IMG/VR virus record: IMGVR_UViG_3300044645_002359
Span: 124,001-188,000 of that record
Direction: 5' to 3' (one strand)
DNA length: 64,000 bases
Shown: positions 5,970-50,068 of the stretch, one piece after another
Layout: each line of letters starts with the position of its first letter
Position numbering within the stretch: position 1 is the first letter of the stretch
The notes under the pieces: model-generated
What the model saw: only the letters and a program-made list of their open reading frames with translations
Told to the model about the DNA's origin: nothing
Databases searched by the model: none
Position numbers and translations under genes: made by a program

Positions 5970-8546
5970 ATGAGTACAACAAGTAGTAAAGTGTTTACAA
6001 AACGTGTTCATGTTTTCACGGCGGGGCCTCAGATTTCCGCTCAGGGGGTAGAAAGAGATTTCACCCCCGATGACCTTCAACAAGTTGTTGAATCTTACGA
6101 TCCTCAAACTCATGAGGCTCCCTTAGTAATAGGGCACTCTGGAGACAATGACAGCGTACCTTCTTTCGGGTGGGTTAAAAAATTGGTTCGGAGCGGAGAG
6201 AAATTATACGCCGATGTCGATTTTACAGACACTGCTAAAGATTTGGTGAAGGACGGTCATTATCGCAAAGTTTCGATCTCTTTCTATTCCCCGAACTCCC
6301 CAATCAACCCACATGAAGGGAAGTGGAGTGTTAGACACTTAGCGCTTCTAGGTGCCTCTCCCCCCGCTGTTAAGGGTTTAGAACCTTTTTCATTCTCCGA
6401 AGACAAGGACGGAGTTTTCAACTTCGCTTCCGTTCTTTCACCCAGCGAGATCTTCGATGAAGAACTCGGCCCAACCCTTCTTGTTGAGCGAAGCCCTTTA
6501 GAAATTCTGAAGGAAAAGCTCGAAGAAGTTCGGGGGGACATGAAGTCTTCTTTGAATGATCTTCAAGAAAACCAGGAGCAACAAACAGAAACAGACGTCG
6601 ATGAGACGCGAAACAACACCTCGGCGGATGAAAGCACCGCCCCCGAAAACCCTAACCAGCAATTTTCCGAAATGAAAAAGAAAATGGGGCGTGAAGGAGC
6701 CGAAGTCTCCGAGTCCGCTCAAAAACTCGCAAACATGGAAGATCAGTTTCCAGAAGAAAAATTTGATGAAGGTGTTTCCCGTAAAGTTACAAAGGGAGCA
6801 CATGGCCAAGAAGTCCAAGTTGTGGAAGAAGTCTTTGAAGAAGACGACGAACTTTCCGACGAACATGGTGAACTTCCGGCTGCCTTCAAGAAAAACATGG
6901 CTAAAATGAAAGCCAAGGCTAAGCATAAGGCCCATGAAAATATGGATGATGAGGAAGAGGATGTTTCCGAAGACCACCGAGAACTCCCTGCTGCTTTAAG
7001 AGCAAATGCATCCAAAATGAAGGCTAAAGCTAAGCATAAGGCCCATGATGAAGACATGGACGAAGATGAAGAAGAAGGCGATTTCGCTGAAGTCAGTGAC
7101 AAAACTGCTTCTGGTGGTAAAGCCAGTTTCGGTAAGCACGCTCAGAAAGACTCTGAAGACCCTGCGGGAAGAGCAAAGACCGCTCGCTCCTCTGACGACA
7201 GCTACGGCGACCGTCAGTCGGTTGGTCACGGCGATGAAGAAGATCGTGAAGGCGTCACTTCTGATGACGAGCAAGACCTTGACAGAGTGAACACTGCTAA
7301 GAACGGTGATCAGGATGAAGATCGCAAGAAACTTGCCAAAGTTGCTGAAGGTGAAGGTGACGAAGACTCTCGTTGGGCAGACCAACCAGAAGGTCGCCGC
7401 CGTGCGATGGAAGACGATCAGTACAACGACGGCGAATACGGTCTTCCTCGCCCCAACAAGCCCGGAATTTCTGACGGTACTGACCCACACGGTCGTGACG
7501 GTGGTCCTACTCCCGTTTCTGAAAAGTCTGAGGAAGAACCCGATTCCGAAGATATCGTAGTTCCTCTTCAAAGCACCAAAGGAAACAAGGTTTCCCGTGT
7601 ACTTCATCAAACCTCCGGACAAAAAAGAGCTCCTTTGAAAGGTGGAGAGATCGCAGACCACAGCGAAGAATCTGATGGTGTTACCCGAACTGCTAAAAAG
7701 GCAGGTGTTTCCGCAGGCAATGACCCCCACGGTCGTGATGATGGCCCAACGAACTTCCCATCTCGTTCTGAAGAAGAGCCCGATGATCTGGAAATGGCTG
7801 TGGATCTGGAGAATGCTACTCAGAGCAATAAAGTTCGTATACTTCGTCAAAAGTCCGGAGACCAGCCTTCTCTTGACCACGCCGAAGACGACGACCTTGA
7901 TGTAGAAGAGTGCGAAGCTACTGGCAAAATGACACGCAAGTACGCTGAGCGTGACACTATGACCCGCACAGGAAAGGGTTCTACCTACGGGCAAAAGCGT
8001 TCGTTTATGGACGAGGAGGATGCTGAAGACGAGGATGACGATTATTCAGAAACCGATGACTTCTGCGGAATGGGCTCAATGGGGCAGGCCAAACCCATGG
8101 GTTACCCTGTTCAAATGTTCGAAGAGTTCCAGCGTGAACTAGAGAACCTTAAGAACGAAAATTCTCGTCTCAAGAAAGAGTACCAAGAGCAACAAACTCG
8201 CTCACGCAAACAACGCATCGCCGAGTTCGTAGATAACCTCTACACCGAAGGAAAGTTGACTGATGGGATTATTCCTCAGAGAGATCTTCAAAATTACTGC
8301 GAAGGTCTTGAGTTCGGGACCCTTGAGTTCGCTGAAGGCGAATCTCCAACAACCAAGTTGTTTGGACTTCTTGATCGCTTACCTAACCTGGTCTACTTCG
8401 GAGAAGTTGTCGCTGATGGTCGCTTCGAAGCTCCCGAAGATGAGGACCTTGACCCCCACGCCCGTGCCATGAAAATGGTTGAGTCCGGAGAGTGTGATTA
8501 CGTTGAAGCCATTAAGCGTTGCATTCCTTGGGGTGGAAGAGGCTGA
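5970..8546 (+). CDS. Mu gpI-like prohead protease fused to a long acidic scaffold region
   Basis: HEAPLVIGH, FGWVKKL, YRKVSISFY, RHLALLGASPPAVKGL protease motifs; C-terminal coiled coil; internal repeats. Confidence 0.88.
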   Translation: MSTTSSKVFTKRVHVFTAGPQISAQGVERDFTPDDLQQVVESYDPQTHEAPLVIGHSGDNDSVPSFGWVKKLVRSGEKLYADVDFTDTAKDLVKDGHYRKVSISFYSPNSPINPHEGKWSVRHLALLGASPPAVKGLEPFSFSEDKDGVFNFASVLSPSEIFDEELGPTLLVERSPLEILKEKLEEVRGDMKSSLNDLQENQEQQTETDVDETRNNTSADESTAPENPNQQFSEMKKKMGREGAEVSESAQKLANMEDQFPEEKFDEGVSRKVTKGAHGQEVQVVEEVFEEDDELSDEHGELPAAFKKNMAKMKAKAKHKAHENMDDEEEDVSEDHRELPAALRANASKMKAKAKHKAHDEDMDEDEEEGDFAEVSDKTASGGKASFGKHAQKDSEDPAGRAKTARSSDDSYGDRQSVGHGDEEDREGVTSDDEQDLDRVNTAKNGDQDEDRKKLAKVAEGEGDEDSRWADQPEGRRRAMEDDQYNDGEYGLPRPNKPGISDGTDPHGRDGGPTPVSEKSEEEPDSEDIVVPLQSTKGNKVSRVLHQTSGQKRAPLKGGEIADHSEESDGVTRTAKKAGVSAGNDPHGRDDGPTNFPSRSEEEPDDLEMAVDLENATQSNKVRILRQKSGDQPSLDHAEDDDLDVEECEATGKMTRKYAERDTMTRTGKGSTYGQKRSFMDEEDAEDEDDDYSETDDFCGMGSMGQAKPMGYPVQMFEEFQRELENLKNENSRLKKEYQEQQTRSRKQRIAEFVDNLYTEGKLTDGIIPQRDLQNYCEGLEFGTLEFAEGESPTTKLFGLLDRLPNLVYFGEVVADGRFEAPEDEDLDPHARAMKMVESGECDYVEAIKRCIPWGGRG

Positions 8547-8575
8547 TTAGCCTCTATACCTTGGAGAGCGACCCT

Positions 8576-9849: not shown

Positions 9850-9857
9850 GAAATGCT

Positions 9858-9915
9858 AACGCATTTCGGTGCGTTTTTACTAAGAGCCTTCAACTTCCGG
9901 GTTGTGGGCTCTTTT
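9858..9915 (+). terminator. Two tandem intrinsic-terminator-like hairpins after the decoration gene
   Basis: AACGCAT-TTCG-GTGCGTT-TTT and AAGAGCC...GGCTCTT-TT. Confidence 0.6.
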
Positions 9916-9976
9916 CACTAAGTTTACTTGAAGTCCCATTTAACTAAAATATAGTTAATAAATCAGTATCAGGGAA

Positions 9977-10795: not shown

Positions 10796-10878
10796 CTCTA
10801 TTGGTTGCGACATCACGCTCACAACCAGATTGCTAAGGCAATCTTTGAAGTCAACTTTACACAAAGGAAACATCTATT

Positions 10879-28711: not shown

Positions 28712-28729
28712 CAAATTTACTTTACTAAA

Positions 28730-30127
28730 ATGACACCGAAACATCCAAAAATAACACACGTTTCCCAGCTATCGGAGCACTCAAGCTGGAGAAAGTACAA
28801 GAGAGAACTTCTTGAACTTGAAATGAATGGCGGCCACTGGGCAAAAACGACTGACTTAACTAAAGAGTCTGTCAAAAATAGTTTCGCTGCCTATTTATCT
28901 CTCTCCACATCCGCACCCCTTCTAAACTGGGAAACTTATGAAGTCTTGGGGTCCGCCTTTGAAGACATTGCTGAAGGCAGGTACCCAATCCTCTTAGTAT
29001 CAATGCCCCCCCGCACAGGAAAGTCAACATTGGGCTCTCTCTTTCTGTCATGGCTCCTGGGTAAAGACCCTGATACTAACCATTTCGTAACTTCTTACAA
29101 TGAGGGTATCACCGACTTAGCAGTAAGTAGAGTTAAGCAGTTGGTTAGTGCCTTTCCTTTTGAGGAATTGTTTTCAAAACTTGATTTGCGGGCTGATAGC
29201 GTAACATCGGCTAACATCCCCTGGCGTAGGCACGGGTATCGTTCACCTTGGGGTGGACCCAACGGGGTACCAGGGGTTTGGTTAATCGATGACTATCACA
29301 AGTCCTCAAATATAACAGTAAATAAAGACTGGATAGAAGAGGAAATTATGACCCGGCGCCACCAAAACAGTGCCATTGTTGTTCTCGGGTCAAGATGGGG
29401 TGATGAAGACATTTTTGGCTACTTTTTAGAGAAATTCGGTGTCTTTGACCCCGTATCAAACCCGAAAGGAGCCGCCCACATTAATTTGTCAGCAATTATT
29501 GAAAGTAAAGAAGAGGCAGAAAATGATATTCTGGGTAGGAATGTAGGGGAAACCCCGAGTATAATCAATTCCTTCTGGTCCCCCGAAAATCTGAACCATA
29601 TTAGAAGGAATATCGGCGATGAAAAGTTCTCCTGGCTCTATAAGGGATGCTCACCGACACCAGAAATCCCCCCATTAGATAGAGTTATCATTTCTGTTGA
29701 TCCTGCTTTCAGTGCCGACAGCATTGATAAAACAGGTATTTGCATCGCAGGGGTTACAAAGAAAAGGGACTACATGTATGTTCTTGATACTTACGAAGGC
29801 AATTGGGACTTGAAAACTGTCGGAGTAATCCTAAGCCTAGCAGTTAAGGCATACGGAGCGGAAGAAATTGTACTTGAATCCGCCAGGGTAAGTGCAGCTT
29901 GGACTGTGTACCTACAGGACTTAGGGTTAAACGTTTGCGTAGGTAGCAAGTTGAAACAAACCAAATTAAATGCCTTCACTCAAATGTTAAGCTCAGGGAA
30001 AGTAAAATTCTCTAATTCGGATACTCTCAGTGCGTTGGATGCCTGTGATAACTTCCAGATTTCATTATCCGACACCATGTATGCAGTCTTAGTTAGCTAC
30101 AGCCAACTACTGCCTGTCGTTACTTGA
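28730..30127 (+). CDS. Second, diverged terminase large subunit paralogue
   Basis: N-terminus similar to preceding TerL; PPRTGKS, LIDDY, GSRWGDED, ISVDPAF...DKTGI; internal deletions. Confidence 0.8.
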   Translation: MTPKHPKITHVSQLSEHSSWRKYKRELLELEMNGGHWAKTTDLTKESVKNSFAAYLSLSTSAPLLNWETYEVLGSAFEDIAEGRYPILLVSMPPRTGKSTLGSLFLSWLLGKDPDTNHFVTSYNEGITDLAVSRVKQLVSAFPFEELFSKLDLRADSVTSANIPWRRHGYRSPWGGPNGVPGVWLIDDYHKSSNITVNKDWIEEEIMTRRHQNSAIVVLGSRWGDEDIFGYFLEKFGVFDPVSNPKGAAHINLSAIIESKEEAENDILGRNVGETPSIINSFWSPENLNHIRRNIGDEKFSWLYKGCSPTPEIPPLDRVIISVDPAFSADSIDKTGICIAGVTKKRDYMYVLDTYEGNWDLKTVGVILSLAVKAYGAEEIVLESARVSAAWTVYLQDLGLNVCVGSKLKQTKLNAFTQMLSSGKVKFSNSDTLSALDACDNFQISLSDTMYAVLVSYSQLLPVVT

Positions 30128-31344: not shown

Positions 31345-31367
31345 GAGGGGCTTCGGCCCCTCTTTTT
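31345..31367 (+). terminator. Intrinsic terminator (UUCG loop)
   Basis: GAGGGGC-TTCG-GCCCCTC-TTTTT. Confidence 0.85.
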
Positions 31368-31401
31368 GAAGGGTAAAGTCTAATACACCTTTTTTTTAAA
31401 C

Positions 31402-32038
31402 ATGCAAGGTTCATTCTCTGAAGACTCCCTTAAAGTTTTCAACAAGCTTGCTTCAGCAACTCAGGAGTTAAATTACAGCGAATCTGGAACAGATTCGTAT
31501 GACTTCACCCGTTGTGTAAGGCCGAATGGCACTGCCTATGGTACCAAGGGTAAATGTAGAAAAGGTTCGGAGGAAGAAAGACAAACTTCAGAACTGCAAA
31601 AAAAATTCCCCCGAAGTAGAGGCATTGGCTAAAAAACTCATAAAGTTTCAAAAGAAAGAAAATTTCTTTAAAAGGCTGCAGGACCTTAGACCCGGTGTTT
31701 TGAGTGAACATTTTATGACTGCAAAAAATTTAGATTTAGTAATGTATTTTCTTGAAAAAGAGAAAGCTGCTCTAGAAGCTGAGAAAACAAGGATAAGGAA
31801 AGGCGAGATTGAAACTCCAAAACCAAAAGGTACTAAATCCTCTGAAGCAGAAATTGTAGCCAAAAAGTTAAATACAAGGTTGAAACGAGAATCTAGTTAT
31901 ACAGATTTCTTAGCAAAAGGCCGTGGATCTCTTGATAAAGAGCACGGTGACGAAGTAGCCCTATATTGGCTTACGAAGTTTAAGGAGGAAAGAGAAGTCC
32001 TGGAAGCCAGGAAAGCAAAATCAGAGGCTGAAAAATAA
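31402..32038 (+). CDS. Leader-bearing late protein, frameshifted at A8 run (31598-31605); ~211 aa if fused
   Basis: ORF 31402..31632 (MQGSFSEDSL...DFTRCVRPNGTAYGTKGKCRKG) and ORF ending 32038 are joined by a +1 shift in CAAAAAAAATT; C-terminal part has two ~65 aa repeats. Confidence 0.55.
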
Positions 32039-32154
32039 GAATACTTACTTGGACTTTACGCGAGTTTGATGAGAAAATTGGGGTCCAATAACAAAAGACT
32101 ACTCATAGTAACTTTCTCAGTACTAGGCATTCAGAGCCAATCAGCAAATCACCA

Positions 32155-32179
32155 GGGGCTTCGGCCCCCCTTTTTTTTT
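32155..32179 (+). terminator. Intrinsic terminator (UUCG loop)
   Basis: GGGGC-TTCG-GCCCC-CC-T9. Confidence 0.8.
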
Positions 32180-32221
32180 CTCTCAGGGTAAAATACTACA
32201 TAACGTGTCTTATGTTTAAAA

Positions 32222-33847
32222 GTGAGTAGTAAATTCCTGTGGCAAAGTTTCTCCTCAAGACTTGAAAAGGCAGGTGAGGAAGCCCTAAGAGCTCTCCAGG
32301 AAGAAGCAAGAATAGAAAAGCAAACTAAAAGTGCTTCTTCCCCTGAGGGAGACCACACAAGTCTAGAGATACAAAGGGCGAAGGAAAAAGCTTCTCAGTC
32401 TTCAGGGAAAGTTAAAAAATGTTCCACAGGCAAACCTTGTTCTGCGACGTGTATTCACAAAAATGATGATTGTATATCGACTTTGCCTGCTCCCCTTGGA
32501 ATTGCCTTAACAAGGCTTTCTAAAGTCCTCTCCGAGCAAGTGGGCGAAAATAGAATTTCAGAAGAACAGGCAGAAGAGGTTGTATCAAAGATAAAAAGTA
32601 CAGAAGATTCTCAACTAAAGGCGTTTGACCTCTTTAAGAAACTAGTTGATTCTGGTAAAGCGTCCGAGACAGAAATGGACTCGGTCGCCAAGCTCCTTAT
32701 TAGCACCACTTTGACCCCTGGCCAAGACAGAAATGCCCCTCGTGTAATGAGCTTCGACGATATCGAGGCGGTCTTGAAGCCAGGGAAATTAGAACAGCTA
32801 GAACAAGCTTATCAAAATTCTTTCAGCTCGAAAGGGAAATTCGACCCCTCTCAGAAAGGGGGAATGGGGGATCTAATAAGTTCGAAGTACCTGGTAAATA
32901 AGGTCTCAGATGAGGTTGCAACCGCTGCTTACTATATGCTCCCCTCAAAAGTGCGGTCTGCCATAGACAAGGCGGGTGCTGTTAAAGGAGAGTCTGTAAT
33001 GTTCGCCGGCAATGATAAAGACGGTAACCCTACTTTTTCTGACAAACCTTCACGAGAGAGAGGAATTTTCTTGGTTAAACGCTGGATGGAACAAGGGGAA
33101 CTGGACCCTTACACAGGAAAACCCATTGACATAAGAAATGCAGAGCCGGAGCACATGGTTGCATTCGCCCATGCACTCGCAAAGGGTGGTGGTGGTGACC
33201 AACCTCGCAACCTGCTTTGGTCGGCATCTCAACCAAACAACCAAAAAGCTGGGTCAGACGATAATTTCATGGAGTGGAAAAAACGTCTTCAAGAGTTTAA
33301 GAAAATGGGTAGAGAGGCTTACGAACGTGAAGTATATAACCCCGCTGCAAACAAAGCCGAAGAAGCCAGAGGTAAGAAGGGTTCTGCCTCCGCAGATATA
33401 GCCAAAGCTTTATCGTCTCAAACACCAGAAGAAAGAATTGCAGGAGTGAAAGGACTGATACAGGCTTACGGGGATAAAGTTCGATATCTGGTAAGAGCGG
33501 CTGAGGTAGGCTGGCAACATCAGGATAGAGACTTAGATCACAGAATGGGTGGCAAACCCGCGTTCATGAACAACGGGGTTCCAAAACTACCCGGAACCAA
33601 TGTGAAGCCGAGCACAGCGGTTTTGGTAGCATTGGCTGCTGTGGACCCTTCGAAAAAAGAAGCTCTCAAGGAAGGGTTAGAGGATTTAAGAAAAGCTCGT
33701 ATTTTGACCGACGGTGAAGCGCAGTCTGTGAGGGGGGATAATAGCGCACGACTTAAACTTCAGACGCAAAAGAGTTCAGACTACGGCGAAAAATTAGCGG
33801 AATTACTGAACAACTTTGTGCCCAATATAAATGTGATATTAGAGTAA
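32222..33847 (+). CDS. Protein with 4-Cys motif and central HNH-like nuclease domain
   Basis: KKCSTGKPCSATCIHKNDDC; DPYTGKPI...EPEHMVAF...GGGDQPRNLLW...NNQK HNH-like pattern. Confidence 0.65.
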   Translation: MSSKFLWQSFSSRLEKAGEEALRALQEEARIEKQTKSASSPEGDHTSLEIQRAKEKASQSSGKVKKCSTGKPCSATCIHKNDDCISTLPAPLGIALTRLSKVLSEQVGENRISEEQAEEVVSKIKSTEDSQLKAFDLFKKLVDSGKASETEMDSVAKLLISTTLTPGQDRNAPRVMSFDDIEAVLKPGKLEQLEQAYQNSFSSKGKFDPSQKGGMGDLISSKYLVNKVSDEVATAAYYMLPSKVRSAIDKAGAVKGESVMFAGNDKDGNPTFSDKPSRERGIFLVKRWMEQGELDPYTGKPIDIRNAEPEHMVAFAHALAKGGGGDQPRNLLWSASQPNNQKAGSDDNFMEWKKRLQEFKKMGREAYEREVYNPAANKAEEARGKKGSASADIAKALSSQTPEERIAGVKGLIQAYGDKVRYLVRAAEVGWQHQDRDLDHRMGGKPAFMNNGVPKLPGTNVKPSTAVLVALAAVDPSKKEALKEGLEDLRKARILTDGEAQSVRGDNSARLKLQTQKSSDYGEKLAELLNNFVPNINVILE

Positions 33848-33851
33848 AACC

Positions 33852-34187
33852 ATGAGGAGAGACAACCGCTTCCCCCGTCCCGACCGCTTCACCTTGGAGC
33901 AAGGTCTACCACCCGGCACACTGAGCCACCCTCAAGCCTATGGGGTGTGGTCGATTTTCTTGCAGTGCGACGATCCTCACGACGTTGCACACAAGTTCCG
34001 TTCCTACCGTGACAGCAACTTTTGTTCAATACCCCGTGAGCAACTCCGGGCAATGAGAGACACCTTAATTCTTGGTATGAGGGAGTCAAATAAATCCTCG
34101 GCAAAACCGCTTAAGGAAAAGCAAAAAGGTCGGCACTATGCCGACTATGAGAATGAATGGGCGGAAAAGCCCCGCACTGGTGCCTAA
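33852..34187 (+). CDS. Hypothetical protein
   Basis: 111 aa ATG ORF tightly packed in operon. Confidence 0.55.
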   Translation: MRRDNRFPRPDRFTLEQGLPPGTLSHPQAYGVWSIFLQCDDPHDVAHKFRSYRDSNFCSIPREQLRAMRDTLILGMRESNKSSAKPLKEKQKGRHYADYENEWAEKPRTGA

Positions 34188-34189
34188 TT

Positions 34190-34555
34190 ATGACAAGTAC
34201 GAAAGATAAAATTGAGGGGCAATACCGCATACCCTGTGGCCCGATGGACATCGCCGCCGATGCAATTTGCCGCCGCTCATTGCGCGACCGTTTCGACAAG
34301 TTGCTCGATAGGCTGACTCTCGAAGTTAACCCTCACCTTCCCACCCCCGGAAAACTACCAAAAGACCTCGAAGTTTCTGATGACGGAAAAATCGTTGCGA
34401 AAAAAGAAGAGTCAGAGGAGGATCGCAGGAGAAAGCTCATTGACGAAGGAAAGTTTCGCGCAGAGGTTCACGCGGAAATCAAAAAGTACCGTGAGGACCT
34501 CCAAGGAAATGGGAAGATGCTACAGGATATCTCTGGTAAGTATGAGTCGATCTGA
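34190..34555 (+). CDS. Hypothetical protein
   Basis: ATG at 34190 right after upstream stop; 121 aa. Confidence 0.55.
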   Translation: MTSTKDKIEGQYRIPCGPMDIAADAICRRSLRDRFDKLLDRLTLEVNPHLPTPGKLPKDLEVSDDGKIVAKKEESEEDRRRKLIDEGKFRAEVHAEIKKYREDLQGNGKMLQDISGKYESI

Positions 34556-34596
34556 GTCTTTCTAAGGGTAAAGTTACTCAGTCTACAAACTATACA

Positions 34597-35184
34597 ATGT
34601 CCAACAGAATCAACGGTGACTTTGACTCTGACTCGATTGAAGCCTTCAGAGCAGCGTACGCAGCACAAATCCTAGAACCGGAAGACCAAGAGACAGACCA
34701 ATACACTGGTCTACCCACAAACTTGGTCCTAAATACTTCCCCTTGGCTACAACACACAGGACTGTGGAAAGCGAACGACGGCACGAACAAGGACTTCCAA
34801 CCGAACCAAGTTCTGGTACCCGGCTTAGAAAATTCTGAGGAAGAAGGCGAGTACGACGAACTTGACGATCTCTCTGAAGAAGAACTCGAAGAACTTATCG
34901 ACCAGCTTCTAGCCGACGAAGGCGACGACGACGACGACGAGGAGGAAGACCTGACCTATTATGAAGAAGATGGGGATGAGGACGAGCTTTCCGATGAAGA
35001 AGTTGAAAGGTTGATTGAGGAGCTTTTGAGTGAAGATGATGAAGAAATTTTCTTGTCAGATGAAAATGAATACGAGGGAGAAGAAATAGAAGAACAGGAA
35101 ATTACTGACGAAGAGATAGATGCCCTGATTGCAGAGATTGAAGCTGAATCCGAAGAGCTTAATTACGATCCTGAAGAAGATTGA
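34597..35184 (+). CDS. Very acidic protein with G-D-F leader
   Basis: MSNRINGDFDSDSIEAF; three LS/IT-D/E-EE-L/V/I-x-x-LI repeats in Asp/Glu-rich C-half. Confidence 0.65.
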   Translation: MSNRINGDFDSDSIEAFRAAYAAQILEPEDQETDQYTGLPTNLVLNTSPWLQHTGLWKANDGTNKDFQPNQVLVPGLENSEEEGEYDELDDLSEEELEELIDQLLADEGDDDDDEEEDLTYYEEDGDEDELSDEEVERLIEELLSEDDEEIFLSDENEYEGEEIEEQEITDEEIDALIAEIEAESEELNYDPEED

Positions 35185-35191
35185 GGTAACA

Positions 35192-35503
35192 ATGGCAACG
35201 TTCAATGAAAGAGCTTTTCTCATACGTGCATTAGCTGGAATTTTCGTAGTTCAATTTATTACGGTAGGTTACCAAACTTGGTCCTGCCAGTCTTCTGCCA
35301 CCCAGAATAAAGACTCAACTCAGGTCACTCTTATTTGCAACAATGCCACAAATTCTTTTAACGAGACCGGAAAACTTGCTCTAACAACGATTCTTGCTCT
35401 CCTGGTTCCTTCCTCGGGTCAAAACGTTTCTGAAATTCTTGATTCGGTGAGAGGAAACCGCAAACGTAAAGGTGAGGACGAAAATCAAGAGGGTAAAGTT
35501 TAG
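35192..35503 (+). CDS. Small membrane protein (two hydrophobic segments), possibly lysis-related
   Basis: FLIRALAGIFVVQFITVGY and LALTTILALLV; GAGG RBS before ATG 35192; charged C-terminus. Confidence 0.5.
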   Translation: MATFNERAFLIRALAGIFVVQFITVGYQTWSCQSSATQNKDSTQVTLICNNATNSFNETGKLALTTILALLVPSSGQNVSEILDSVRGNRKRKGEDENQEGKV

Positions 35504-35521
35504 GATCACTGTAGTGTCTTT

Positions 35522-36496
35522 ATGTACGGAGCTAATTTAGATTTTTCTTCTGTGTCTTTGCCAGGGGTCGGGGGTTCTCTCAATGCAGCTACCGCCATAT
35601 CCTCCGACAAACTTCAGGAAATGAATCGCACTGGCAAAAAATGGCGCACCGATAAAGACGGTAACATGTCTTTCCATAACGAAGCCATTTTGGACGCCAA
35701 TAAAGCAAGTCGCGAACGAAGGGAAAACTTGGTAAATCGTGACCGAGACGCCCATGCAGACGGTCAAGCGGCGATGAAAGAAATTTTCGGCCGAAAGAAA
35801 GCCCGGATGGAAGCCTTTCGAGAAATAAAAAGAAACGAATACAACTTTGCCGACGACACGGAACTAATGTCAATGCCACAACCTTTCGGTGAGGGTTGTT
35901 CTACAAGTTGCAAAAGCCCTGGAAAGTGTTCTTGCTCTTCCTGTAAAGCAAAAGCGAAAGCTGACTCAGAATTTCGTGAATGGACCACAGAAAAGCGCAA
36001 GAAACTTCAAACCGGTGAGGCGAAAGGGGAATTCGCCGGCCCGGGAATGTCGTTCCCGATCGCAAGTCCAGAGGACGTTTCAGCCGCTTGGTCCTCTGTA
36101 GGACGGGCAGCGAACCCCCGTAAAATCATGGCAGAAATCATTCGCATTGCTAAGAAGTATGGCTGGGAATCTGGCCTACCTCAGACGGTTAAAGATCGCA
36201 TGGAAGAGGGTGAGTCCGGTCTACCGTCCCCTGACTTTCGTGAATGGCCTTCAACAAAGAGGGAAGCTATGAAAAAAGGCGACATTGTCGGACAATTCGC
36301 TGGCCCAGGAATGTCCTTTCCCATCGCAAGTCCACAAGATGTTTCGGCAGCTTGGTCTTCCGTTGGCCGAGCTTCAAATCCTCGCGAAACAATGGCTAAA
36401 ATTATTGCAATCGCTAAGAAAAACGGCTGGGAGTCTGGACTCCCTCAGACAGTTAAAGACCGCCTGAACGCAGGTCAGTCAGGATTACCGAGGTAA
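35522..36496 (+). CDS. Hypothetical protein with tandem 88 aa domain duplication
   Basis: FREW...FAGPGMSFPIASPxDVSAAWSSVGRA...GWESGLPQTVKDR repeated with 264 nt period (35969, 36233). Confidence 0.75.
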   Translation: MYGANLDFSSVSLPGVGGSLNAATAISSDKLQEMNRTGKKWRTDKDGNMSFHNEAILDANKASRERRENLVNRDRDAHADGQAAMKEIFGRKKARMEAFREIKRNEYNFADDTELMSMPQPFGEGCSTSCKSPGKCSCSSCKAKAKADSEFREWTTEKRKKLQTGEAKGEFAGPGMSFPIASPEDVSAAWSSVGRAANPRKIMAEIIRIAKKYGWESGLPQTVKDRMEEGESGLPSPDFREWPSTKREAMKKGDIVGQFAGPGMSFPIASPQDVSAAWSSVGRASNPRETMAKIIAIAKKNGWESGLPQTVKDRLNAGQSGLPR

Positions 36497-36500
36497 GAAA

Positions 36501-36872
36501 ATGGGTTTAGTTGAAATTCCTCTAATCATTGCCGGTTGGTTTCTCACAGCAGGAATAGCAGGAGTAGGCGGAACTTTTGCCATTCAGGGTCGGAACAATA
36601 AGAGATTAGACACACTAAGGAGTAACTCTGATAAGAAAATTGAAAGACTTATCGAGGAAAATGACAAGAGAATTAACACTTTGATTGCTGCCAATACCCT
36701 CCAAAATGAGAACGTATTAAATCATATTAAGAACGTAGAAAAGGCTCTTAATGACATGAGAGCCGAATTACCGGAAAAGTACACTCTCAAGTCCGACCAC
36801 TTAAGATTGGTAGACAAAGTAGAAGAGTTGTCGATACAGTTCTACAGACATAGAGAGAAAGAAGGTGAGTGA
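36501..36872 (+). CDS. Membrane-anchored coiled-coil protein
   Basis: N-terminal hydrophobic segment followed by heptad-rich region. Confidence 0.55.
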   Translation: MGLVEIPLIIAGWFLTAGIAGVGGTFAIQGRNNKRLDTLRSNSDKKIERLIEENDKRINTLIAANTLQNENVLNHIKNVEKALNDMRAELPEKYTLKSDHLRLVDKVEELSIQFYRHREKEGE

Positions 36873-37377
36873 GAGCTACGACTGGCACCGGCTGGAAGGT
36901 TTGGGTTTTGACCTGAACTACATTGAAAAGGCACTTCCTGCCTCATACAAAAAAGGTCTAACTGCACGAGAGCAAGGTGTCGCTAAGCGTGAAGCGAAAG
37001 ATACTATGGAGAAGGCCAGCAGCAAGAAAACCTCGGCGAAAGAATTGTATAAAGACTGGGAGTCGGATAAGAGTTTCCGGAATAGGGAAAAAGAGATACC
37101 GAAGTCCCCAGCCACAGAAGCATTTGAGCGCGACTTTGCTGAGTCTTCCCCTTCCGACACAGCCCTTAAGAACAAGTCAAAAAAGTCCGGCATCCCTATG
37201 CCTATACTGAGACAAGTGTTTAAGAGAGGAATGGCAGCTTGGAGGTCTGGTCACCGTCCTGGTGTTGCACCGCAGCAATGGGCTCAGGCAAGAGTGTCAA
37301 GTTTCATCACGGGAGTGGGAGGAGCACGGAAGGCTGATGCCGACCTTTGGAAAAAAGCTAAGGGTAAAAAACATTAG
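36865..37377 (+). CDS. Conserved viral protein (DUF5824-like C-terminal domain)
   Basis: LKNKSKKSGIPMPILRQVFKRGMAAWRSGHRPGVAPQQWAQARVSSF, recognised from algal viruses and cyanophages. Confidence 0.6.
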   Translation: MSESYDWHRLEGLGFDLNYIEKALPASYKKGLTAREQGVAKREAKDTMEKASSKKTSAKELYKDWESDKSFRNREKEIPKSPATEAFERDFAESSPSDTALKNKSKKSGIPMPILRQVFKRGMAAWRSGHRPGVAPQQWAQARVSSFITGVGGARKADADLWKKAKGKKH

Positions 37378-37393
37378 TTTAGAACTTAGAGAA

Positions 37394-37762
37394 ATGAGTA
37401 ACTTGGGATCTTTTTCTCCGGAAGCTTACAGAGCTTACAAATATGGGGTTGAAAACCCGAGTAATTTCATGGGAATTGCTCCTGCATTCGAGGCAGAACC
37501 AGGGAGAAACCCTGATTCTTTTTCCATGGGCGAAGATGACGAGACTGACGAAGACGATTACGATCCAGATTACGGGAACGAGGACTTTGAGCCGAACGGG
37601 GGCATGGCTATGACCCAACTTCGCTCTATGCAAGATAACATCGAGACTATTCTTGAAATGATCGGTCCCTACTCAAACTTAGACCCCTGGATGGCTGCAA
37701 AGTTGGCCGAGGCTGAGCATGGTATGACAGCGATCGCCGACGCTTTACAATACAGAGATTGA
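37394..37762 (+). CDS. Hypothetical protein with G-S-F leader
   Basis: MSNLGSFSPEAYRAY; ATG 37394 lies just downstream of a GGGTAAA motif. Confidence 0.6.
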   Translation: MSNLGSFSPEAYRAYKYGVENPSNFMGIAPAFEAEPGRNPDSFSMGEDDETDEDDYDPDYGNEDFEPNGGMAMTQLRSMQDNIETILEMIGPYSNLDPWMAAKLAEAEHGMTAIADALQYRD

Positions 37763-37767
37763 TCAAA

Positions 37768-38127
37768 ATGTGGGGATCTTTCTTACAATCTGCTTATGAT
37801 TCTTTCCTGGAAGCGGCTATAGAAAAGTACGTTGAGAAAGTTGACAAAAATTCACTAGATTGCAATGACCCCCACGCCACTCCGAGTCACCCTACGAAAT
37901 CTCACATAGTTAAAGCGTGCTATCCTGGAGCCCCGAAAGGTGGCAAGCTGATTCGATTCGGTCAACAAGGTGTGAAAGGGTCGCCAAAGAAAGAAGGGGA
38001 ATCGGAGGCTTATAAAGCCAGACGAGAGGCTTTCAAGGCAAGACATGCTGCTAATATTGCGAAGGGTAAGTCTTCAGCTGCCTACTGGAGTAATCTGGAA
38101 GAATGGGCGGAAGACATTAAGTGGTAG
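37768..38127 (+). CDS. Conserved phage protein with G-S-F leader
   Basis: MWGSFLQSAYDSF; KSHIVKAC...KLIRFGQQG...RREAFKARH...SAAYWS domain seen in many aquatic phages. Confidence 0.6.
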   Translation: MWGSFLQSAYDSFLEAAIEKYVEKVDKNSLDCNDPHATPSHPTKSHIVKACYPGAPKGGKLIRFGQQGVKGSPKKEGESEAYKARREAFKARHAANIAKGKSSAAYWSNLEEWAEDIKW

Positions 38128-38159
38128 GGTATAATTCAGGTTGTAATCAACCTTAAACA

Positions 38160-38858
38160 ATGAAACACAACCACAGAATACTGCCCGGCCACATGGGAGG
38201 CGAGTACGTAGAAGGCAATGTTATACCTGTACAAGTAACTCAGTGTGACACTAACACTGCCAACCATGTAATGTGGCACTTTGCCAACTGGTGCCTTTAT
38301 GGTAAAGAAGAAGATCGAGCAGCCTATAAAGGTTTATCAGGTTGTTATAGTAAAGAAAAAATTATCGAGGAGAGGTTGAGACTAGCTGGTCAAATGCATG
38401 TCGATTCCGGCCACATTCAAGAAATAGGCAGGATTAACGGTAAGAGAGCCATGTCTCCGGGTGGATGGTTATACATGAACAGAATAGAATATGGGCGTTT
38501 AGGCTACAAATCAGGGATAGGAAAGTCGGAAAACAGGTTAACAGGGGAACAACTATCTGAGTTGGCTAAAAAGACTTGGAGAGAAGGGAAAGGTTTGGCA
38601 GCTTTAACTCCTGAGCAAAGAAGCGAAATAGGAAAAAGAGCTGGCAAAATTAGTGGACAAGTGAACAGAGAAAATAAAACAGGGGTTTGCGGAATTCCTC
38701 CAGAAGAACACTCCAAAAGAATGTCCGAAACGAACCGTCAAAAATGGCAATGTCCCGTGTGTGGTTTAATTGGTAATGCCAAGCAAATAAACGCGCATAT
38801 GGCAGCTGAACATAATCTCGATAAAAAAGCCAAAATTAAGTGTAACTCTAACCACTAG
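38160..38858 (+). CDS. Free-standing HNH-like endonuclease with C-terminal C2H2 zinc finger
   Basis: HNHRILPGHMGGEYVEGNVI...NHVMWH; EQRSEIGKRAG-type repeats; CPVCG...HMAAEH. Confidence 0.65.
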   Translation: MKHNHRILPGHMGGEYVEGNVIPVQVTQCDTNTANHVMWHFANWCLYGKEEDRAAYKGLSGCYSKEKIIEERLRLAGQMHVDSGHIQEIGRINGKRAMSPGGWLYMNRIEYGRLGYKSGIGKSENRLTGEQLSELAKKTWREGKGLAALTPEQRSEIGKRAGKISGQVNRENKTGVCGIPPEEHSKRMSETNRQKWQCPVCGLIGNAKQINAHMAAEHNLDKKAKIKCNSNH

Positions 38859-38891
38859 GAGGGTAAAGTTCACTGACAGCAATCTCTAAAC

Positions 38892-39515
38892 ATGCAAGGA
38901 AATTTCGGTATCCCAAATATAGACCACCTGGTAGAAGGAGTTCACTACCACATTGTAGATTGGGACTTTGCAGACCCTGCTCCTGCAGCCCCGACACCTA
39001 CCCCTCCTCACAATCCGGGTGAATCGTGCCCACCAAATCAAAAAATGGTCTTCGGGGTATGCCGCCGCGTGAATGCTAGCGGAGAACAACAAGTAGGAGA
39101 CGACACTGACCAGGAAAGATCCCTAAAAGACCAAGCTAAGAAAGAAGGCTCGGCTTTTGAGAATAACAAGGCAATGAGTGCCGGTGGTAAGAAGTACGGT
39201 TGGGCTATGAAAGGTGGAAAACCGGTAATGGTGGCTTGGGGATCTGTAGCAGGTGAGAAAAAAGTTGGGCTCAAGAAGCCTGCTTCTGCGGCTCCACCTA
39301 CCGCGCTCACCGGTTCCCCCGCTCCACGCGCTGGAGCATCCCCTGCACCCGCTAGAGCTGGTTCCCCAGCTCCAACTACAGCTCCAACAGCCCCAATATC
39401 AGCTACTGATAGAGCTGCTTATAACGCAGGAGGGGGCAATGCCGCAGCGCAAAGAGGCACGGGGCGAACTACTGAGCAAGTTATAGCTCAAGGTAAGAAA
39501 ATTTGGATAGACTAG
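38892..39515 (+). CDS. Pro/Ala-rich hypothetical protein with G-N-F leader
   Basis: MQGNFG; CPPNQKMVFGVCR motif; AGASPAP repeats. Confidence 0.6.
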   Translation: MQGNFGIPNIDHLVEGVHYHIVDWDFADPAPAAPTPTPPHNPGESCPPNQKMVFGVCRRVNASGEQQVGDDTDQERSLKDQAKKEGSAFENNKAMSAGGKKYGWAMKGGKPVMVAWGSVAGEKKVGLKKPASAAPPTALTGSPAPRAGASPAPARAGSPAPTTAPTAPISATDRAAYNAGGGNAAAQRGTGRTTEQVIAQGKKIWID

Positions 39516-39590
39516 ATCAGGGTAAGGGTAGGCGCTGATACGAATAAAGGGTAAGTTACAATTAACAGACATACTCTCCCCACTTGGCAA

Positions 39591-40112
39591 ATGTATAACC
39601 CAAGACCCTTAGACTTAGATACATTCTCAGAACAAGAGTTGCAAATCGAAGGGTACACTCATATGCCCACGGATTATTACAGGAACACCGTCATGGAGCC
39701 TGAAACCGTCTCCACATTAAGACCGAGTTTCGGAGAGTATGAAGCCATGGGAGAGAGGCACGAGGAAATCTCTTCTAAGATTGACTTACTCAATCAAGCA
39801 ATGAAACTTTCCCGTCAGAGGGGGGCTTTTCAAGAGTTGCAGAATCAAATGGCTGCCGTCAAGAAACTTGTAAAAGAGCGTGAAGAAATTGATGCAAAAA
39901 TGGCCACTGTTGACCTTGCCCGAAAGAAAACAGATGACCACAACATTGCTGCCGGTATGGAAACTTCTTACACAGAGCAACTGGATTCGGTAAACTCTCG
40001 CATCAACCGTTTACAAAAGCTTCTTCAGGACTTCAGTGAGTCCATGGGAGAAGGTGAGTTTGACTTTACTCGTAACGGTCGTAAAGGCAAAGCCTGTGAG
40101 GAGACACAATGA
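39591..40112 (+). CDS. Coiled-coil hypothetical protein
   Basis: 173 aa; several F/Y-x-E motifs; ends in degenerate KGKAC motif. Confidence 0.6.
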   Translation: MYNPRPLDLDTFSEQELQIEGYTHMPTDYYRNTVMEPETVSTLRPSFGEYEAMGERHEEISSKIDLLNQAMKLSRQRGAFQELQNQMAAVKKLVKEREEIDAKMATVDLARKKTDDHNIAAGMETSYTEQLDSVNSRINRLQKLLQDFSESMGEGEFDFTRNGRKGKACEETQ

Positions 40113-41389
40113 GGCGCTGCTCGAAAGGAAAAAGCTGCGGAGGAACTTGCATCAACCGCAACGTTAAATGCAGAGCCACTTTGTCTCCGAAAGTATCAAA
40201 GCAGGTTGAGGAAGCGGGCGACATCTTCCTCCGTTTGGTTAACGAGGATAAAAAACCGAGTTTGATTGTACAAAGGCTGATTGACGCCTTAGGGTTGGGC
40301 CCACTAACTCAAAGAGAAGTTGGCAATGACTTTCCCGTCTTAAAGAGGGAGGCAGAACGCCAACTCGCTGAGTTGCGCAGCCAACCCTCTATGACAGATG
40401 AGGAGATTGATCGGGCCAAACGACTTGAAATGGCTCTTATGGATGCTTGGGAAAAGCATACTAAGGCCGACCGCATGGTACTCTACGATCGACAGGACGC
40501 TCGAGAGTTTGACCATGATTTCATTCCTACCGACAAATTCGGCAAAGATTATGACTGGTCTCAGTCTTACGAATCTGGTGCCAAAGGTTTGGGCTCAGGA
40601 AGCTACGGAAACGTTATGCTCTCTAAACCACCACCGGCTCTTGTAGTGAAGAGAGGAGAAGTGAGTGAAAGTGAGGTTAAAATTCTAGAAAAGTTAAACG
40701 GTAAAGACATTTCTCCGAAGTTCGTTTCAGCGGAGGTCAACAAATACACCGTTATGGCGCGAGAAGGGGATATAGAATTCTACGAAGGAAGAATTGCAAT
40801 GACACGGGTTCCGGGTAAAGCCGTAGAAGATTTTGATGACAATGATCCCGCATACGGGACGAAGGTCGGAAGTACAACTCTTGGAGACGCTTATTTTCTT
40901 CTTCGTAGGAGACTTCACGAAAGCGGAGTTGCCCATAATGACTCTCACATAGAAAATGTCATTGTAGATAATAAGGGGAAAGCACGCTTCATTGATTTCG
41001 GGCTTTCTCAGGACGACCCTAGAGCAGCTCTATCAGAGGCCATTGGCATACTTGCAGATCGAAAATTGCTTCCTCAAGGTGTTGTACTAAAACGAGTTTT
41101 AGATGATTTTTCCGGGGACCGAAAAGGAAGGAAATATAAAGCTTACACCCAACCCATAAAAGACCTTCTTAAGGGTGGCACCAATACCAACCTCGAAAAG
41201 GTTGTTCGTAATCGCACTAAAGTATACGCAGAGCTTGCAAAGCTAGGTTTATCCAAGGATGAGATAGCTGAGCTTGTGGTTCATGAGTTAAACCAGCCCA
41301 TCAGCTCCTACAACAAAGGTGCCTGGTCCAAAGTAAGCAAAAAAGATGCAATGCGGATTATCCCCCTACTCTACGAAGGCGTAAATTAA
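40109..41389 (+). CDS. Ser/Thr protein-kinase-like protein with N-terminal 4-Cys motif
   Basis: RRCSKGKSCGGTCINRNVKC; Gly-loop LGSGSYGNV, VVK lysine, catalytic HNDSHIEN, DFG. Confidence 0.8.
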   Translation: MRRCSKGKSCGGTCINRNVKCRATLSPKVSKQVEEAGDIFLRLVNEDKKPSLIVQRLIDALGLGPLTQREVGNDFPVLKREAERQLAELRSQPSMTDEEIDRAKRLEMALMDAWEKHTKADRMVLYDRQDAREFDHDFIPTDKFGKDYDWSQSYESGAKGLGSGSYGNVMLSKPPPALVVKRGEVSESEVKILEKLNGKDISPKFVSAEVNKYTVMAREGDIEFYEGRIAMTRVPGKAVEDFDDNDPAYGTKVGSTTLGDAYFLLRRRLHESGVAHNDSHIENVIVDNKGKARFIDFGLSQDDPRAALSEAIGILADRKLLPQGVVLKRVLDDFSGDRKGRKYKAYTQPIKDLLKGGTNTNLEKVVRNRTKVYAELAKLGLSKDEIAELVVHELNQPISSYNKGAWSKVSKKDAMRIIPLLYEGVN

Positions 41390-41550
41390 TGAAAAATGAT
41401 CAAAAGTATTTGGAGCTAATGGCTCTCTACAAAAAAGTTCGAGGTAACCCGGATAAAATTAAACAAGCAGACAAAGTGTTGGATGCGGCTCTGAAACTTG
41501 GTAAGAGTGGTGTGAGTCCAGACGCAAAAGAAGCAGCGAGATACCTCTGA
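41389..41550 (+). CDS. 53 aa helical protein coupled to kinase gene (not in ORF track)
   Basis: TAATG overlap; MKNDQKYLELMALYKKVRGNPDKIKQADKVLDAALKLGKSGVSPDAKEAARYL. Confidence 0.6.
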   Translation: MKNDQKYLELMALYKKVRGNPDKIKQADKVLDAALKLGKSGVSPDAKEAARYL

Positions 41551-50064: not shown

Positions 50065-50068
50065 ACAA

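What the first reader, a model, noticed from the sequence alone, without database searches (positions are those of the whole stretch)
31402..41550. Candidate capsid-loaded effector system: shared N-terminal targeting leader on otherwise unrelated late proteins
Seen in sequence: four unrelated proteins begin with the same 11-residue pattern G-[SD]-F-x-x-[DES]-[SA]-[LIY]-x-[VAS]-[FY]. These are 31402 (GSFSEDSLKVF), 34597 (GDFDSDSIEAF), 37394 (GSFSPEAYRAY) and 37768 (GSFLQSAYDSF); 38892 has a partial copy (MQGNFG). All but 37768 sit directly behind a GGGTAAA motif. Established: T4 internal proteins share a short N-terminal capsid-targeting sequence (MKTYQEFIAE) that the prohead protease removes after Glu. 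Inference: this is an analogous, apparently undescribed loading signal in a Mu-type head, delivering a variable cargo set (acidic protein, DUF5824-like domain, nuclease, kinase) into the host with the DNA.
Basis: partly seen in the sequence, partly recalled or inferred. Interest (0 to 1): 0.85.

Follow-up and report, generated by a model that had tools for sequence, protein, structure and literature searches.

The report
Shared leader on late phage proteins
A short conserved tag sits at the very start of at least five otherwise unrelated late proteins of an uncultured freshwater phage with a Mu-type head. In relatives the same tag sits on ADP-ribosyltransferases and kinases, so it is a good but unproven candidate for a signal that loads proteins into the virus particle for injection.

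Summary
A search with no prior pattern over all window N-termini returns the same motif (1-6 of 300 controls reach it).

- **Independent check:** a profile built from one family alone finds the other families in related contigs, 10 of 16 hits at N-termini against a 4% background.
- **Conservation:** the Gly and both Phe are invariant down to 43% identity and use all synonymous codons.
- **Tag behaves as an add-on:** homologues of the 37768 domain in other phages lack it, and one relative fuses two of the proteins behind a single leader.
- **Breadth:** the 31402-type N-terminal module matches 940 protein clusters, nearly always at residues 1-58. Its C-terminal partners vary and include ADP-ribosyltransferases and kinases, and one ADP-ribosyltransferase version lies in this same locus of a relative.

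GGGTAAA is a late-promoter-like element shared with head, tail and lysis genes, so it is not specific to these proteins. In the window itself the kinase and the DUF5824 protein carry no leader.

Packaging into the capsid, and removal of the leader, are plausible by analogy with T4 and P1 but remain untested.

The parts
31402..31632 (+). Family D protein (76 aa). Leader GSFSEDSLKVF at residues 3-13 (31408-31440), followed by a two-Cys knuckle (YDFTRC...GKCRKG). It amounts to the N-terminal module alone, with almost nothing behind it.
   Evidence: A profile of this module finds 940 protein clusters, matched at residues 1-58. Stand-alone versions of 68-78 aa exist. The gene is absent from the 90%-identical relative L003.
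34597..35184 (+). Family A protein (195 aa). Leader GDFDSDSIEAF at residues 7-17 (34615-34647), then a conserved NTSPW...GLWK core and an acidic tail of repeated LSxEExxxLIxEL units. It is a core gene of the locus in all relatives.
   Evidence: The leader residues are nearly invariant across 22 sequences. The S-CBWM1 gp108 homologue has only a degenerate leader.
37394..37762 (+). Family B protein (122 aa, acidic). Leader GSFSPEAYRAY at residues 5-15 (37406-37438).
   Evidence: The L005 orthologue reads GSFSEDSLRSF, closer to the 31402 leader than to its own orthologue. A 306-aa version exists in L027.
37768..38127 (+). Family C protein (119 aa). Leader GSFLQSAYDSF at residues 3-13 (37774-37806), joined to a phrog_7595 domain.
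   Evidence: G3, F5 and F13 are invariant in 13 sequences down to 43% identity. Homologues of the domain in SIO1, CRP, S-CBS2, HMO-2011 and Vibrio D274 phages lack the leader.
38892..39515 (+). Family E protein (207 aa) with a degenerate leader, GNFGIPNIDHL (38898-38930). In L017 the homologous C-terminal part sits behind a canonical leader (MLGEFSLESIL...).
32222..33847 (+). 541-aa protein with a Cys-rich module (residues ~65-85) and an HNH-like motif. Its N-terminus (SSKFLWQSFSSRL) resembles the leader only loosely. It is the orthologue (43% identity, full length) of S-CBWM1 gp174, which the depositors call 'virion structural protein'.
   Evidence: Membership in the leader set is not established.
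35522..36496 (+). 324-aa protein with two DUF6582-like repeats. The N-terminus (GANLDFSSVSL) is leader-like by eye only and has no helical amphipathicity.
   Evidence: A core gene of the locus. Not counted as leader-bearing.
40109..41389 (+). RIO/APH-like protein kinase. It has no leader; it begins with the Cys module RCSKGKSCGGTCI.
   Evidence: Leader plus kinase fusions do exist elsewhere (P0112).
36865..37377 (+). DUF5824 protein (170 aa) with no leader.
   Evidence: PF19141, 69 bits.
31347..31377 (+). Terminator-promoter element: GGGGCTTCGGCCCC hairpin, T run, then GGGTAAA. Left border of the family D cassette.
32156..32192 (+). Second copy of the same terminator-promoter element, forming the right border of the family D cassette. 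L003 has one hybrid copy and no cassette.
34566..34572 (+). GGGTAAA late-promoter-like element 31 nt before 34597. Equivalent elements lie at 37362, 38861, 35491, 30468, 41555 and 46378, and GGGTATA variants at 38127 and 50470.
   Evidence: In S-CBWM1 the same motif precedes the portal, protease, capsid, sheath, tape-measure, fibre and endolysin genes (one search read).
5970..8546 (+). Mu-like head maturation protease (residues 7-359) with a 500-residue acidic extension. It is the candidate scaffold and processing enzyme that a capsid-targeting leader would have to work with.
   Evidence: No interaction with the leader was tested.

Best explanation
The leader is a portable N-terminal tag. It consists of a short extended segment, (hydrophobic)-G-[S/D/E]-F-[S/D/N], running into an acidic amphipathic helix of about 14 residues: x-[E/D]-[A/S]-[L/I/V/Y]-x-x-[F/Y]...

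A lineage of freshwater phages with Mu-type heads, related to Synechococcus phage S-CBWM1, places this tag on late-expressed accessory proteins. The most likely role is to bring these proteins into the assembling prohead, through the scaffold/protease core or the inner shell, so that they travel with the DNA into the next host. [quoted passage not shown]

Shown here:
- the tag exists and is under protein-level selection;
- it is strictly N-terminal;
- it is combined with interchangeable C-terminal domains, including enzymes that would be useful at the start of infection;
- it is encoded in mobile cassettes bounded by terminator-promoter elements, inside the structural gene region.

Inferred, not shown: late expression, presence in virions, the binding partner, any proteolytic removal, and injection.
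For: 1. **Real and N-terminal.** Four exact matches, all at starts. The pattern-free search returns the same motif. A profile built from family A alone finds families B, C, D/H and others in related contigs; 10 of 16 distinct hits are N-terminal against a 4.25% background (P = 1e-10; counted by family, 5 of 10, P = 3e-5).

2. **Selection on the peptide.** G3, F5 and F13 are invariant in family C down to 43% identity and the leader is nearly invariant in family A. All four Gly codons and both Phe codons are used among 54 distinct leader DNAs.

3. **An add-on, not part of the fold.** The phrog_7595 profile starts after the leader. Homologues in other phage groups lack it. L005 fuses a 31402-type N-terminus to a 37768-type domain. 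L017 puts a canonical leader on the family E C-terminal part.

4. **Position and breadth.** The family D module matches 940 clusters (350 at E <= 1e-10). In 121 of the best 150 the Gly is residue 3, and protein lengths run from 68 to 699 aa. When the Cys knuckle lies 200 residues in, the leader still sits at the N-terminus.

5. **Effector-like partners.** ADPrib_exo_Tox/ART in 5 members, kinases in 2-3, plus cytidylyltransferase-like and DUF3626. In L077 a leader-ART gene lies in this very locus next to TerL, PhoH and the Cys/HNH-like gene (32222 homologue). Phage ARTs next to terminase and portal genes are argued to be head-packaged (PMC9503650), and T4 Alt is the precedent.

6. **Context.** The locus lies between the terminase and the giant baseplate/fibre protein and is syntenic over many contigs. 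Its genes carry the GGGTAAA element shared with head, tail and lysis genes. A Mu-like prohead protease with a long extension is present.

7. **A neighbour labelled as virion protein.** The orthologue of the 32222 protein in S-CBWM1 is deposited as 'virion structural protein'.

8. **Structure and charge.** AlphaFold2 with 150 sequences gives pLDDT 87-91 for residues 1-20, with a helix at 7-20. The leaders are amphipathic and acidic, which suits a protein partner better than a membrane.

9. **Precedents for N-terminal capsid-targeting signals:** PMC3012670 (T4) and PMC9024508 (P1 DarB).
Against: - No virion proteomics is available for this phage or a close relative.
- In the S-CBWM1 record the family A homologue gp108 and the RIO-like kinase are not labelled as virion proteins, and the basis of the 'virion structural protein' labels is unknown to me (paper not held).
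- S-CBWM1 gp108 has only a degenerate leader.
- No conserved cleavage-like motif follows the leader, and in family C it runs straight into the conserved domain.
- Families A, C and E are core, syntenic genes rather than a hypervariable effector set. They could be morphogenetic factors that share a docking helix.
- PhoH, not a known virion protein, carries the same promoter element.
- The leader shows no sequence homology to the T4 signal, and the head proteins are of a different type, so the analogy is functional only.
Confidence: 0.45

Rival explanations
1. The leader is a docking helix for a shared partner that has nothing to do with packaging. Candidates are a phage or host protein acting inside the infected cell: RNA polymerase or one of the phage sigma factors, one of the phage kinases or phosphatases, PhoH, or a chaperone. 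Ser/Asp/Glu alternation at position 2 could even mark a phosphosite.
For: An amphipathic acidic helix suits protein binding. Position 2 alternates S/E/D/H. S-CBWM1-type phages encode several kinases, phosphatases and two sigma factors. Families A, C and E are core genes in fixed order, as expected of a functional module.
Against: This does not explain why the tag must sit at the extreme N-terminus in 121 of 150 representatives. It also does not explain why ARTs and kinases, which are useful at the start of infection, would be made from late-type promoters inside the structural region.
Confidence: 0.25
2. The similarity is a by-product of how the genes are shuffled. Cassettes recombine at repeated terminator-promoter elements and carry the first codons along, or the genes are old tandem paralogues that kept only their first helix. 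No common function is implied.
For: The family D cassette is bounded by two copies of the same hairpin/T-run/GGGTAAA element and is missing in L003, which has one hybrid copy. 5' UTR lengths are uniform at 31-36 nt. The leader genes are neighbours.
Against: 37768 has no promoter element of its own yet keeps the leader. The Gly and Phe positions stay invariant while their codons vary freely. The leader persists over divergence to about 40% identity and through domain swaps. Neutral hitch-hiking codons would have decayed.
Confidence: 0.12
3. The leader loads proteins into the contractile tail or baseplate rather than the head, as N-terminal signals do for cargo of extracellular contractile injection systems.
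For: The phage has a sheath, baseplate and very large baseplate/fibre proteins. The locus abuts the giant baseplate-like gene.
Against: No loading ATPase of the contractile-injection-system type was seen near the locus. In true phages the tube lumen is occupied by the tape measure protein (established knowledge). The locus starts at the terminase, i.e. on the head-packaging side.
Confidence: 0.08
4. The resemblance is a chance match among short N-termini.
For: Pairwise 11-mer scores of 26-31 are individually unremarkable, and the pattern was fitted after the fact to the four sequences.
Against:: the pattern-free search, the single-family profile test and the 940-cluster N-terminal module all argue against chance.
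Confidence: 0.02

Closest known systems
T4 capsid-targeting sequence (CTS) of the internal proteins (PMC3012670; Mullaney and Black 1996 as cited in PMC9024508)
   Same: A roughly 10-residue N-terminal sequence shared by otherwise unrelated, diverse proteins. The genes sit in a plastic locus with their own regulatory elements. A prohead protease is present. The T4 head also carries an ADP-ribosyltransferase, Alt, which is injected (PMC9503650).
   Different: No sequence homology. The head is Mu-type (Portal_Mu, Mu-like_Pro), not T4-type. No conserved (L/I)xE-type cleavage site follows the leader. Three of the families are conserved core genes rather than hypervariable ones. Packaging and processing are not demonstrated.
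P1 DarB N-terminal packaging signal (PMC9024508)
   Same: An N-terminal stretch of about 30 residues is sufficient to send a protein into a myovirus capsid, and the protein it carries is an enzyme delivered to the host.
   Different: The P1 signal is described for one protein, not as a motif shared by many families. No sequence relation was tested or is expected.
MuF (Phage_Mu_F / SPP1 gp7) domain fused to C-terminal toxin or effector domains (PMC5576092, PMC5512222, PMC9503650)
   Same: A conserved N-terminal head-incorporation module with polymorphic C-terminal enzymatic domains, often ARTs, in phages with portal-terminase heads that include Mu-type ones.
   Different: MuF is a folded domain of a few hundred residues. 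Here the shared part is 11-20 residues (58 in family D), and no leader-bearing protein matches PF04233.
Encapsulin cargo-loading peptides (from my own knowledge, not tested)
   Same: A short peptide with a small-residue/hydrophobic signature that docks cargo to the inner face of an HK97-fold shell.
   Different: These peptides are usually C-terminal, belong to a different lineage, and involve no DNA packaging or injection. The resemblance is conceptual only.
T4-type mobile regulatory cassettes (promoter/stem-loop elements flanking shuffled genes; from my own knowledge)
   Same: The family D gene is an insertion/deletion bounded by repeated hairpin-plus-promoter elements.
   Different: Here the elements appear to be late-type promoter junctions. 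This explains gene mobility, not conservation of the peptide.

Membership tests
T4-type capsid-targeting sequence system | A short N-terminal sequence shared by otherwise unrelated proteins | tested here: met
T4-type capsid-targeting sequence system | Sequence homology to the T4 signal, and a T4-type head (gp20/gp21/gp22/gp23 homologues) | tested here: not met
The head genes are Mu-type (Portal_Mu, Mu-like_Pro, Mu Gp36, Phage_cap_E). Any likeness is physicochemical only.
T4-type capsid-targeting sequence system | The signal is necessary and sufficient for incorporation into proheads | not testable with these tools
   Needs virion proteomics and reporter fusions.
T4-type capsid-targeting sequence system | The signal is removed by the prohead protease at a consensus site | tested here: inconclusive
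   A prohead protease is present. No conserved motif follows the leader across families. The specificity of Mu-like proteases is unknown to me.
T4-type capsid-targeting sequence system | The genes are expressed late, together with head genes | tested here: inconclusive
   The leader genes share the GGGTAAA element with structural and lysis genes in the window and in S-CBWM1. No expression data are available.
MuF-fused polymorphic effectors | An N-terminal Phage_Mu_F (PF04233) domain | tested here: not met
   No PF04233 hit in any leader-bearing protein scanned.
MuF-fused polymorphic effectors | Variable C-terminal enzymatic or toxin domains behind a constant N-terminal module | tested here: met
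   ART, kinase, cytidylyltransferase-like, DUF3626, phrog_7595 and many unknown tails. After masking, 85 of the 150 tails cluster with no other.
   PF19141 matches only 36865-37377, which has no leader. 37768 matches phrog_7595 and has no Pfam hit.
Signal peptides / membrane-targeting amphipathic helices | A hydrophobic core, or a basic amphipathic helix | tested here: not met
   The leaders carry net charge 0 to -5 and have no hydrophobic stretch.

The most novel reading that the evidence does not exclude
A sequence-defined, portable packaging tag for Mu-type (HK97-fold) phage heads. One uncultured but abundant freshwater phage lineage would use a leader of about 12-20 residues, extended in one family to a 58-residue helix-plus-Cys-knuckle module found in about 940 protein clusters. 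The tag would load interchangeable effectors (ADP-ribosyltransferases, kinases, many unknown domains) into virions. The injected-protein repertoire of these phages could then be read directly from metagenomes, and the tag could be reused to load foreign proteins.
Probability: 0.4. Interest if true: 0.8.

Novelty: new variant of a known kind. Interest (0 to 1): 0.65.

Why it matters
Which proteins phages inject along with their DNA is known for only a handful of model phages, and a defined targeting signal is described for only a few (T4, and P1 DarB). A recognisable leader in an environmental phage lineage would allow three things. Candidate injected effectors could be listed from sequence alone; 940 clusters already match the larger module. 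Late-expressed ARTs and kinases in the structural region would have an explanation. A Mu-type head would gain a loading tag that can be tested with reporter fusions. Even if packaging proves wrong, the leader and the 58-residue module are widespread conserved N-terminal elements that neither Pfam nor PHROGs describes.

Tried and rejected
- **Nearest relatives.** Megablast of 18 kb against phage isolates found nothing. The nearest isolate is known only from protein search: S-CBWM1, TerL 58% identical.
- **Family annotation.** Pfam and PHROGs give no annotation for the leader proteins beyond phrog_7595.
- **Solved structures.** PDB sequence searches with 37768, 35522, 32222, P0047 and P0078 found nothing useful.
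- **Structure prediction of 37768.** AlphaFold2 with 13 sequences gave pLDDT 55.8, too poor for a fold search. I ran no fold search on either model, because the small N-terminal module would be swamped by long helices.
- **A Pfam call spent badly.** One call went on the wrong ten representatives while I was looking for the ART members.
- **First tail clustering.** It was dominated by low-complexity links and was repeated with masking.
- **Is 31402 a frameshifted longer gene?** I asked whether it continues into ORF 31526-32038. No homologue supports this, and stand-alone modules of 68-78 aa exist, so it is left open.
- **Membrane-helix reading.** Rejected on charge.
- **RNA/DNA-level explanation of the conservation.** Rejected on codon variety.
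- **MuF test.** I looked for Phage_Mu_F in 8519-9277 even at E = 5; no hit.
- **S-CBWM1 paper.** Xu et al. 2018, which may hold virion mass spectrometry, is not in the library.
Full report
**What the window is.** The window is part of a 201-kb IMG/VR contig (L002 is identical to it) from an uncultured phage.
- It has no close DNA relative among isolates.
- The nearest isolate is the estuarine Synechococcus myovirus S-CBWM1, with TerL 58% identical. It shares the gene order TerL, PhoH, Cys-rich 520-aa protein, small proteins, RIO-like kinase, giant baseplate-like protein.
- The window holds a tail sheath, a Mu-type portal (PF06074), a Mu-like prohead protease (PF10123, 858 aa), a Mu Gp36-like adaptor and an E-type capsid protein.

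**The observation.**
- 38892 starts MQGNFG.
- Beyond the leader the five proteins are unrelated (best cross E = 0.57).
- Because the pattern was fitted to its own examples, I ran three tests that do not depend on it.
  - The tripeptide G[SDNQ]F lies in the first ten residues of 6 of 62 window proteins against 0.54 expected (P = 2e-5).
It beats 294 of 300 sets of internal windows and 299 of 300 shuffles.
  - A profile built only from family A (34597 homologues) was scanned over 361,276 ORF positions of related contigs. It finds the other families, and 10 of 16 distinct non-A hits are N-terminal against a 4.25% background (P = 1e-10; counted by family, P = 3e-5).

**Relatives.** An alignment of the 541-aa neighbour (A1) retrieved 4 viral and 68 metagenome loci, nearly all from freshwater samples.
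- The locus is syntenic across them: TerL, PhoH, Cys/HNH-like protein, two small genes, family A, a variable slot, the 35522 homologue, a membrane protein, DUF5824 or B, C, E, a coiled-coil protein, kinase, giant protein.
- Within families the leader is among the best-conserved parts. G3, F5 and F13 are invariant in 13 family C sequences down to 43% identity. I5, G7, D8, F9, E15, A16, F17, R18, A20, Y21 and A22 are (nearly) invariant in 22 family A sequences.
- Among 54 distinct leader DNAs all four Gly codons and both Phe codons occur at the invariant positions, so selection acts on the peptide.
- The family-weighted consensus is G-[S/E/D]-F-[S/D]-x-[E/D]-[A/S]-[L/I/V/Y]-x-x-[F/Y], with weaker conservation for another 5-8 residues. 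The Gly is residue 3, 5 or 7.

**The leader is modular.**
- The phrog_7595 profile aligns to 37768 only from residue 26.
- 46 isolate phages (SIO1, CRP roseophages, S-CBS2, HMO-2011 and others) have the domain, mostly aligning from residue 23-33. The Vibrio phage D274 protein starts without any leader.
- In L005 a 290-aa protein joins a 31402-type N-terminus to a 37768-type C-terminus.
- In L017 a canonical leader precedes the C-terminal part of family E.
- The 31402 gene is missing from the 90%-identical relative L003. In the window it is bounded by two copies of one element (GGGGCTTCGGCCCC hairpin, T run, GGGTAAA), while L003 has a single hybrid copy. The gene is therefore a cassette that moves by recombination between terminator-promoter junctions. 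It also sits at different places in L056, L041, L028 and L077.

**The 31402 family is large.** Its first 58 residues form a conserved module: leader helix, linker with a second DFSE-like motif, and a two-Cys knuckle (A4).
- A profile of this module finds 940 cluster representatives at E <= 1e-3 (350 at <= 1e-10) among 1.84 billion.
- In the best 150 the match is almost always profile 1-58 to protein 1-58, and the Gly is residue 3 in 121 of them. Lengths run from 68 to 699 aa.
- Where the knuckle lies 200 residues in, the leader is still at the N-terminus.
- After low-complexity masking, 85 of the 150 tails cluster with no other and 44 share one conserved region.
- Pfam finds ADP-ribosyltransferase domains in 5 members, kinase-type domains in 2-3, and a cytidylyltransferase-like domain, DUF3626 and DUF6496.
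- One leader-ART gene (349 aa, PF03496 at 54 bits) lies in this same locus in L077, between the Cys/HNH-like gene and the two small genes.
- AlphaFold2 with the 150-sequence alignment gives pLDDT 87-91 for residues 1-20, with a helix at 7-20 followed by a small beta unit.
- Leaders are amphipathic as helices (62nd-94th percentile of window N-termini for the canonical ones) and carry net charge 0 to -5.

**GGGTAAA.** The motif occurs 25 times against 10.5 +/- 3 expected, 21 of them on the + strand.
- About 16 copies lie 29-48 nt before start codons, often just after a GC hairpin and T run. They precede PhoH, 32222, 35522, the giant protein, tail-fibre genes and others.
- In S-CBWM1 the same motif (46 on the + strand, 7 on the - strand) precedes the portal, protease, capsid, sheath, tape-measure, fibre and endolysin genes (one search read). 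That phage encodes two sigma factors.
- I read the motif as the -10-like element of a late promoter class. It supports the 'late' label for the leader genes but is not specific to them.

**Mechanism.** The best-supported reading (0.45) is a virion-incorporation signal.
- For:
  - the strict N-terminal position and the add-on behaviour of the leader;
  - interchangeable, enzyme-rich partner domains;
  - late-type promoters;
  - location between the terminase and the baseplate genes;
  - a prohead protease with a long acidic extension;
  - the deposited label 'virion structural protein' on the S-CBWM1 orthologue (43% identity) of the neighbouring 32222 protein;
  - published arguments that phage ARTs beside packaging genes are head-packaged (PMC9503650);
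  - precedents for N-terminal capsid signals in T4 (PMC3012670) and P1 (PMC9024508).
- Against:
  - no proteomics;
  - no conserved cleavage site;
  - core rather than hypervariable status of families A, C and E;
  - S-CBWM1 gp108 and its kinase carry no virion label;
  - PhoH shares the promoter element.
- Rivals are a docking helix for a non-structural partner (0.25), a recombination or paralogy relic (0.12), tail loading (0.08) and chance (0.02).

In this window the kinase (40109) and the DUF5824 protein (36865) have no leader, and the 32222 protein has at most a degenerate one. These proteins instead share a second N-terminal element, a Cys-rich module (K/R-C-x-K-G-K-x-C-G/S-x-T/S-C-I). 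That module is itself widespread and is present in the S-CBWM1 'virion structural protein'. Removal of the leader 'after Glu' has no support.

**Verdict.** The leader is a real, conserved and apparently undescribed N-terminal element with variable partner domains, in a Mu-head phage lineage. As a functional analogue of the T4 and P1 capsid-targeting signals it is a new variant of a known kind. The packaging function is a well-motivated hypothesis, not a result.

Noticed in passing
window 9376-13895: The major capsid protein gene is in pieces. Only the C-terminal half (13185-13895) matches capsid families. Upstream lie three Rfam group I introns (10862-11158, 11177-12101, 12320-13083) and three homing-endonuclease ORFs (9977-10795, 11357-12082, 12481-13065). 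Exon junctions were not mapped.
   Followed up: partly
window 26948-30127: Two terminase-like ORFs lie in tandem with near-identical N-termini. The first (587 aa) is a good TerL. The second (465 aa) has only a weak nuclease-domain match. L003 has both; L005, L012 and S-CBWM1 have one.
   Followed up: no
window 40109-40180, 32414-32476; L075 47076-48662: A second shared N-terminal element: a Cys-rich module (K/R-C-x-K-G-K-x-C-G/S-x-T/S-C-I...C). It begins the kinase, lies at residue ~65 of the 32222 protein, and occurs in S-CBWM1 gp106, gp113 and gp174. A back-translated pattern of it hit 523 stretches in metagenomes. It may be another targeting or binding module.
   Followed up: partly
window 31347-31377 and 32156-32192; L003 9940-9975: Repeated terminator-promoter junctions (identical GGGGCTTCGGCCCC hairpin, T run, GGGTAAA) flank a gene cassette that is present in the window and L006 and absent in L003. 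This looks like a mechanism for cassette gain and loss.
   Followed up: yes
window 34860-35184: The acidic tail of the family A protein is built of repeats of an LSxEE(I/V)xxL(I/L)xE(I/L) unit. Copy number varies from 1 to about 6 between relatives.
   Followed up: no
window 31526-32038: A 170-aa Lys-rich ORF overlaps the end of 31402 in another frame and is conserved in L006. It has no family hit. Whether it is a separate gene or the shifted continuation of 31402 is unresolved.
   Followed up: partly
window 8519-9277; L075 44623-45396: The protein after the prohead protease ends in a conserved Cys cluster (...LPxPGxxCRCxDRCRC), shared with S-CBWM1 gp171. From memory this resembles the end of MuF-type minor head proteins, but Pfam gives no hit even at E = 5.
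   Followed up: partly
window 35522-36496: An internal duplication of a segment of about 90 residues (EFAGPGMSFPIASP...GLPQTVKDR), weakly DUF6582-like. S-CBWM1 gp111 has only the N-terminal part.
   Followed up: no
window 21908-22210 and 50036-50416: Two further leader-like strings lie outside the locus. One is internal, ESFSLPSLEDFSE at residue ~26 of a small acidic protein in the baseplate region. The other is MHGSFSSPIKQ at a possible non-ATG start of the ORF after the collar-domain tail fibre. Neither was counted as a member.
   Followed up: no
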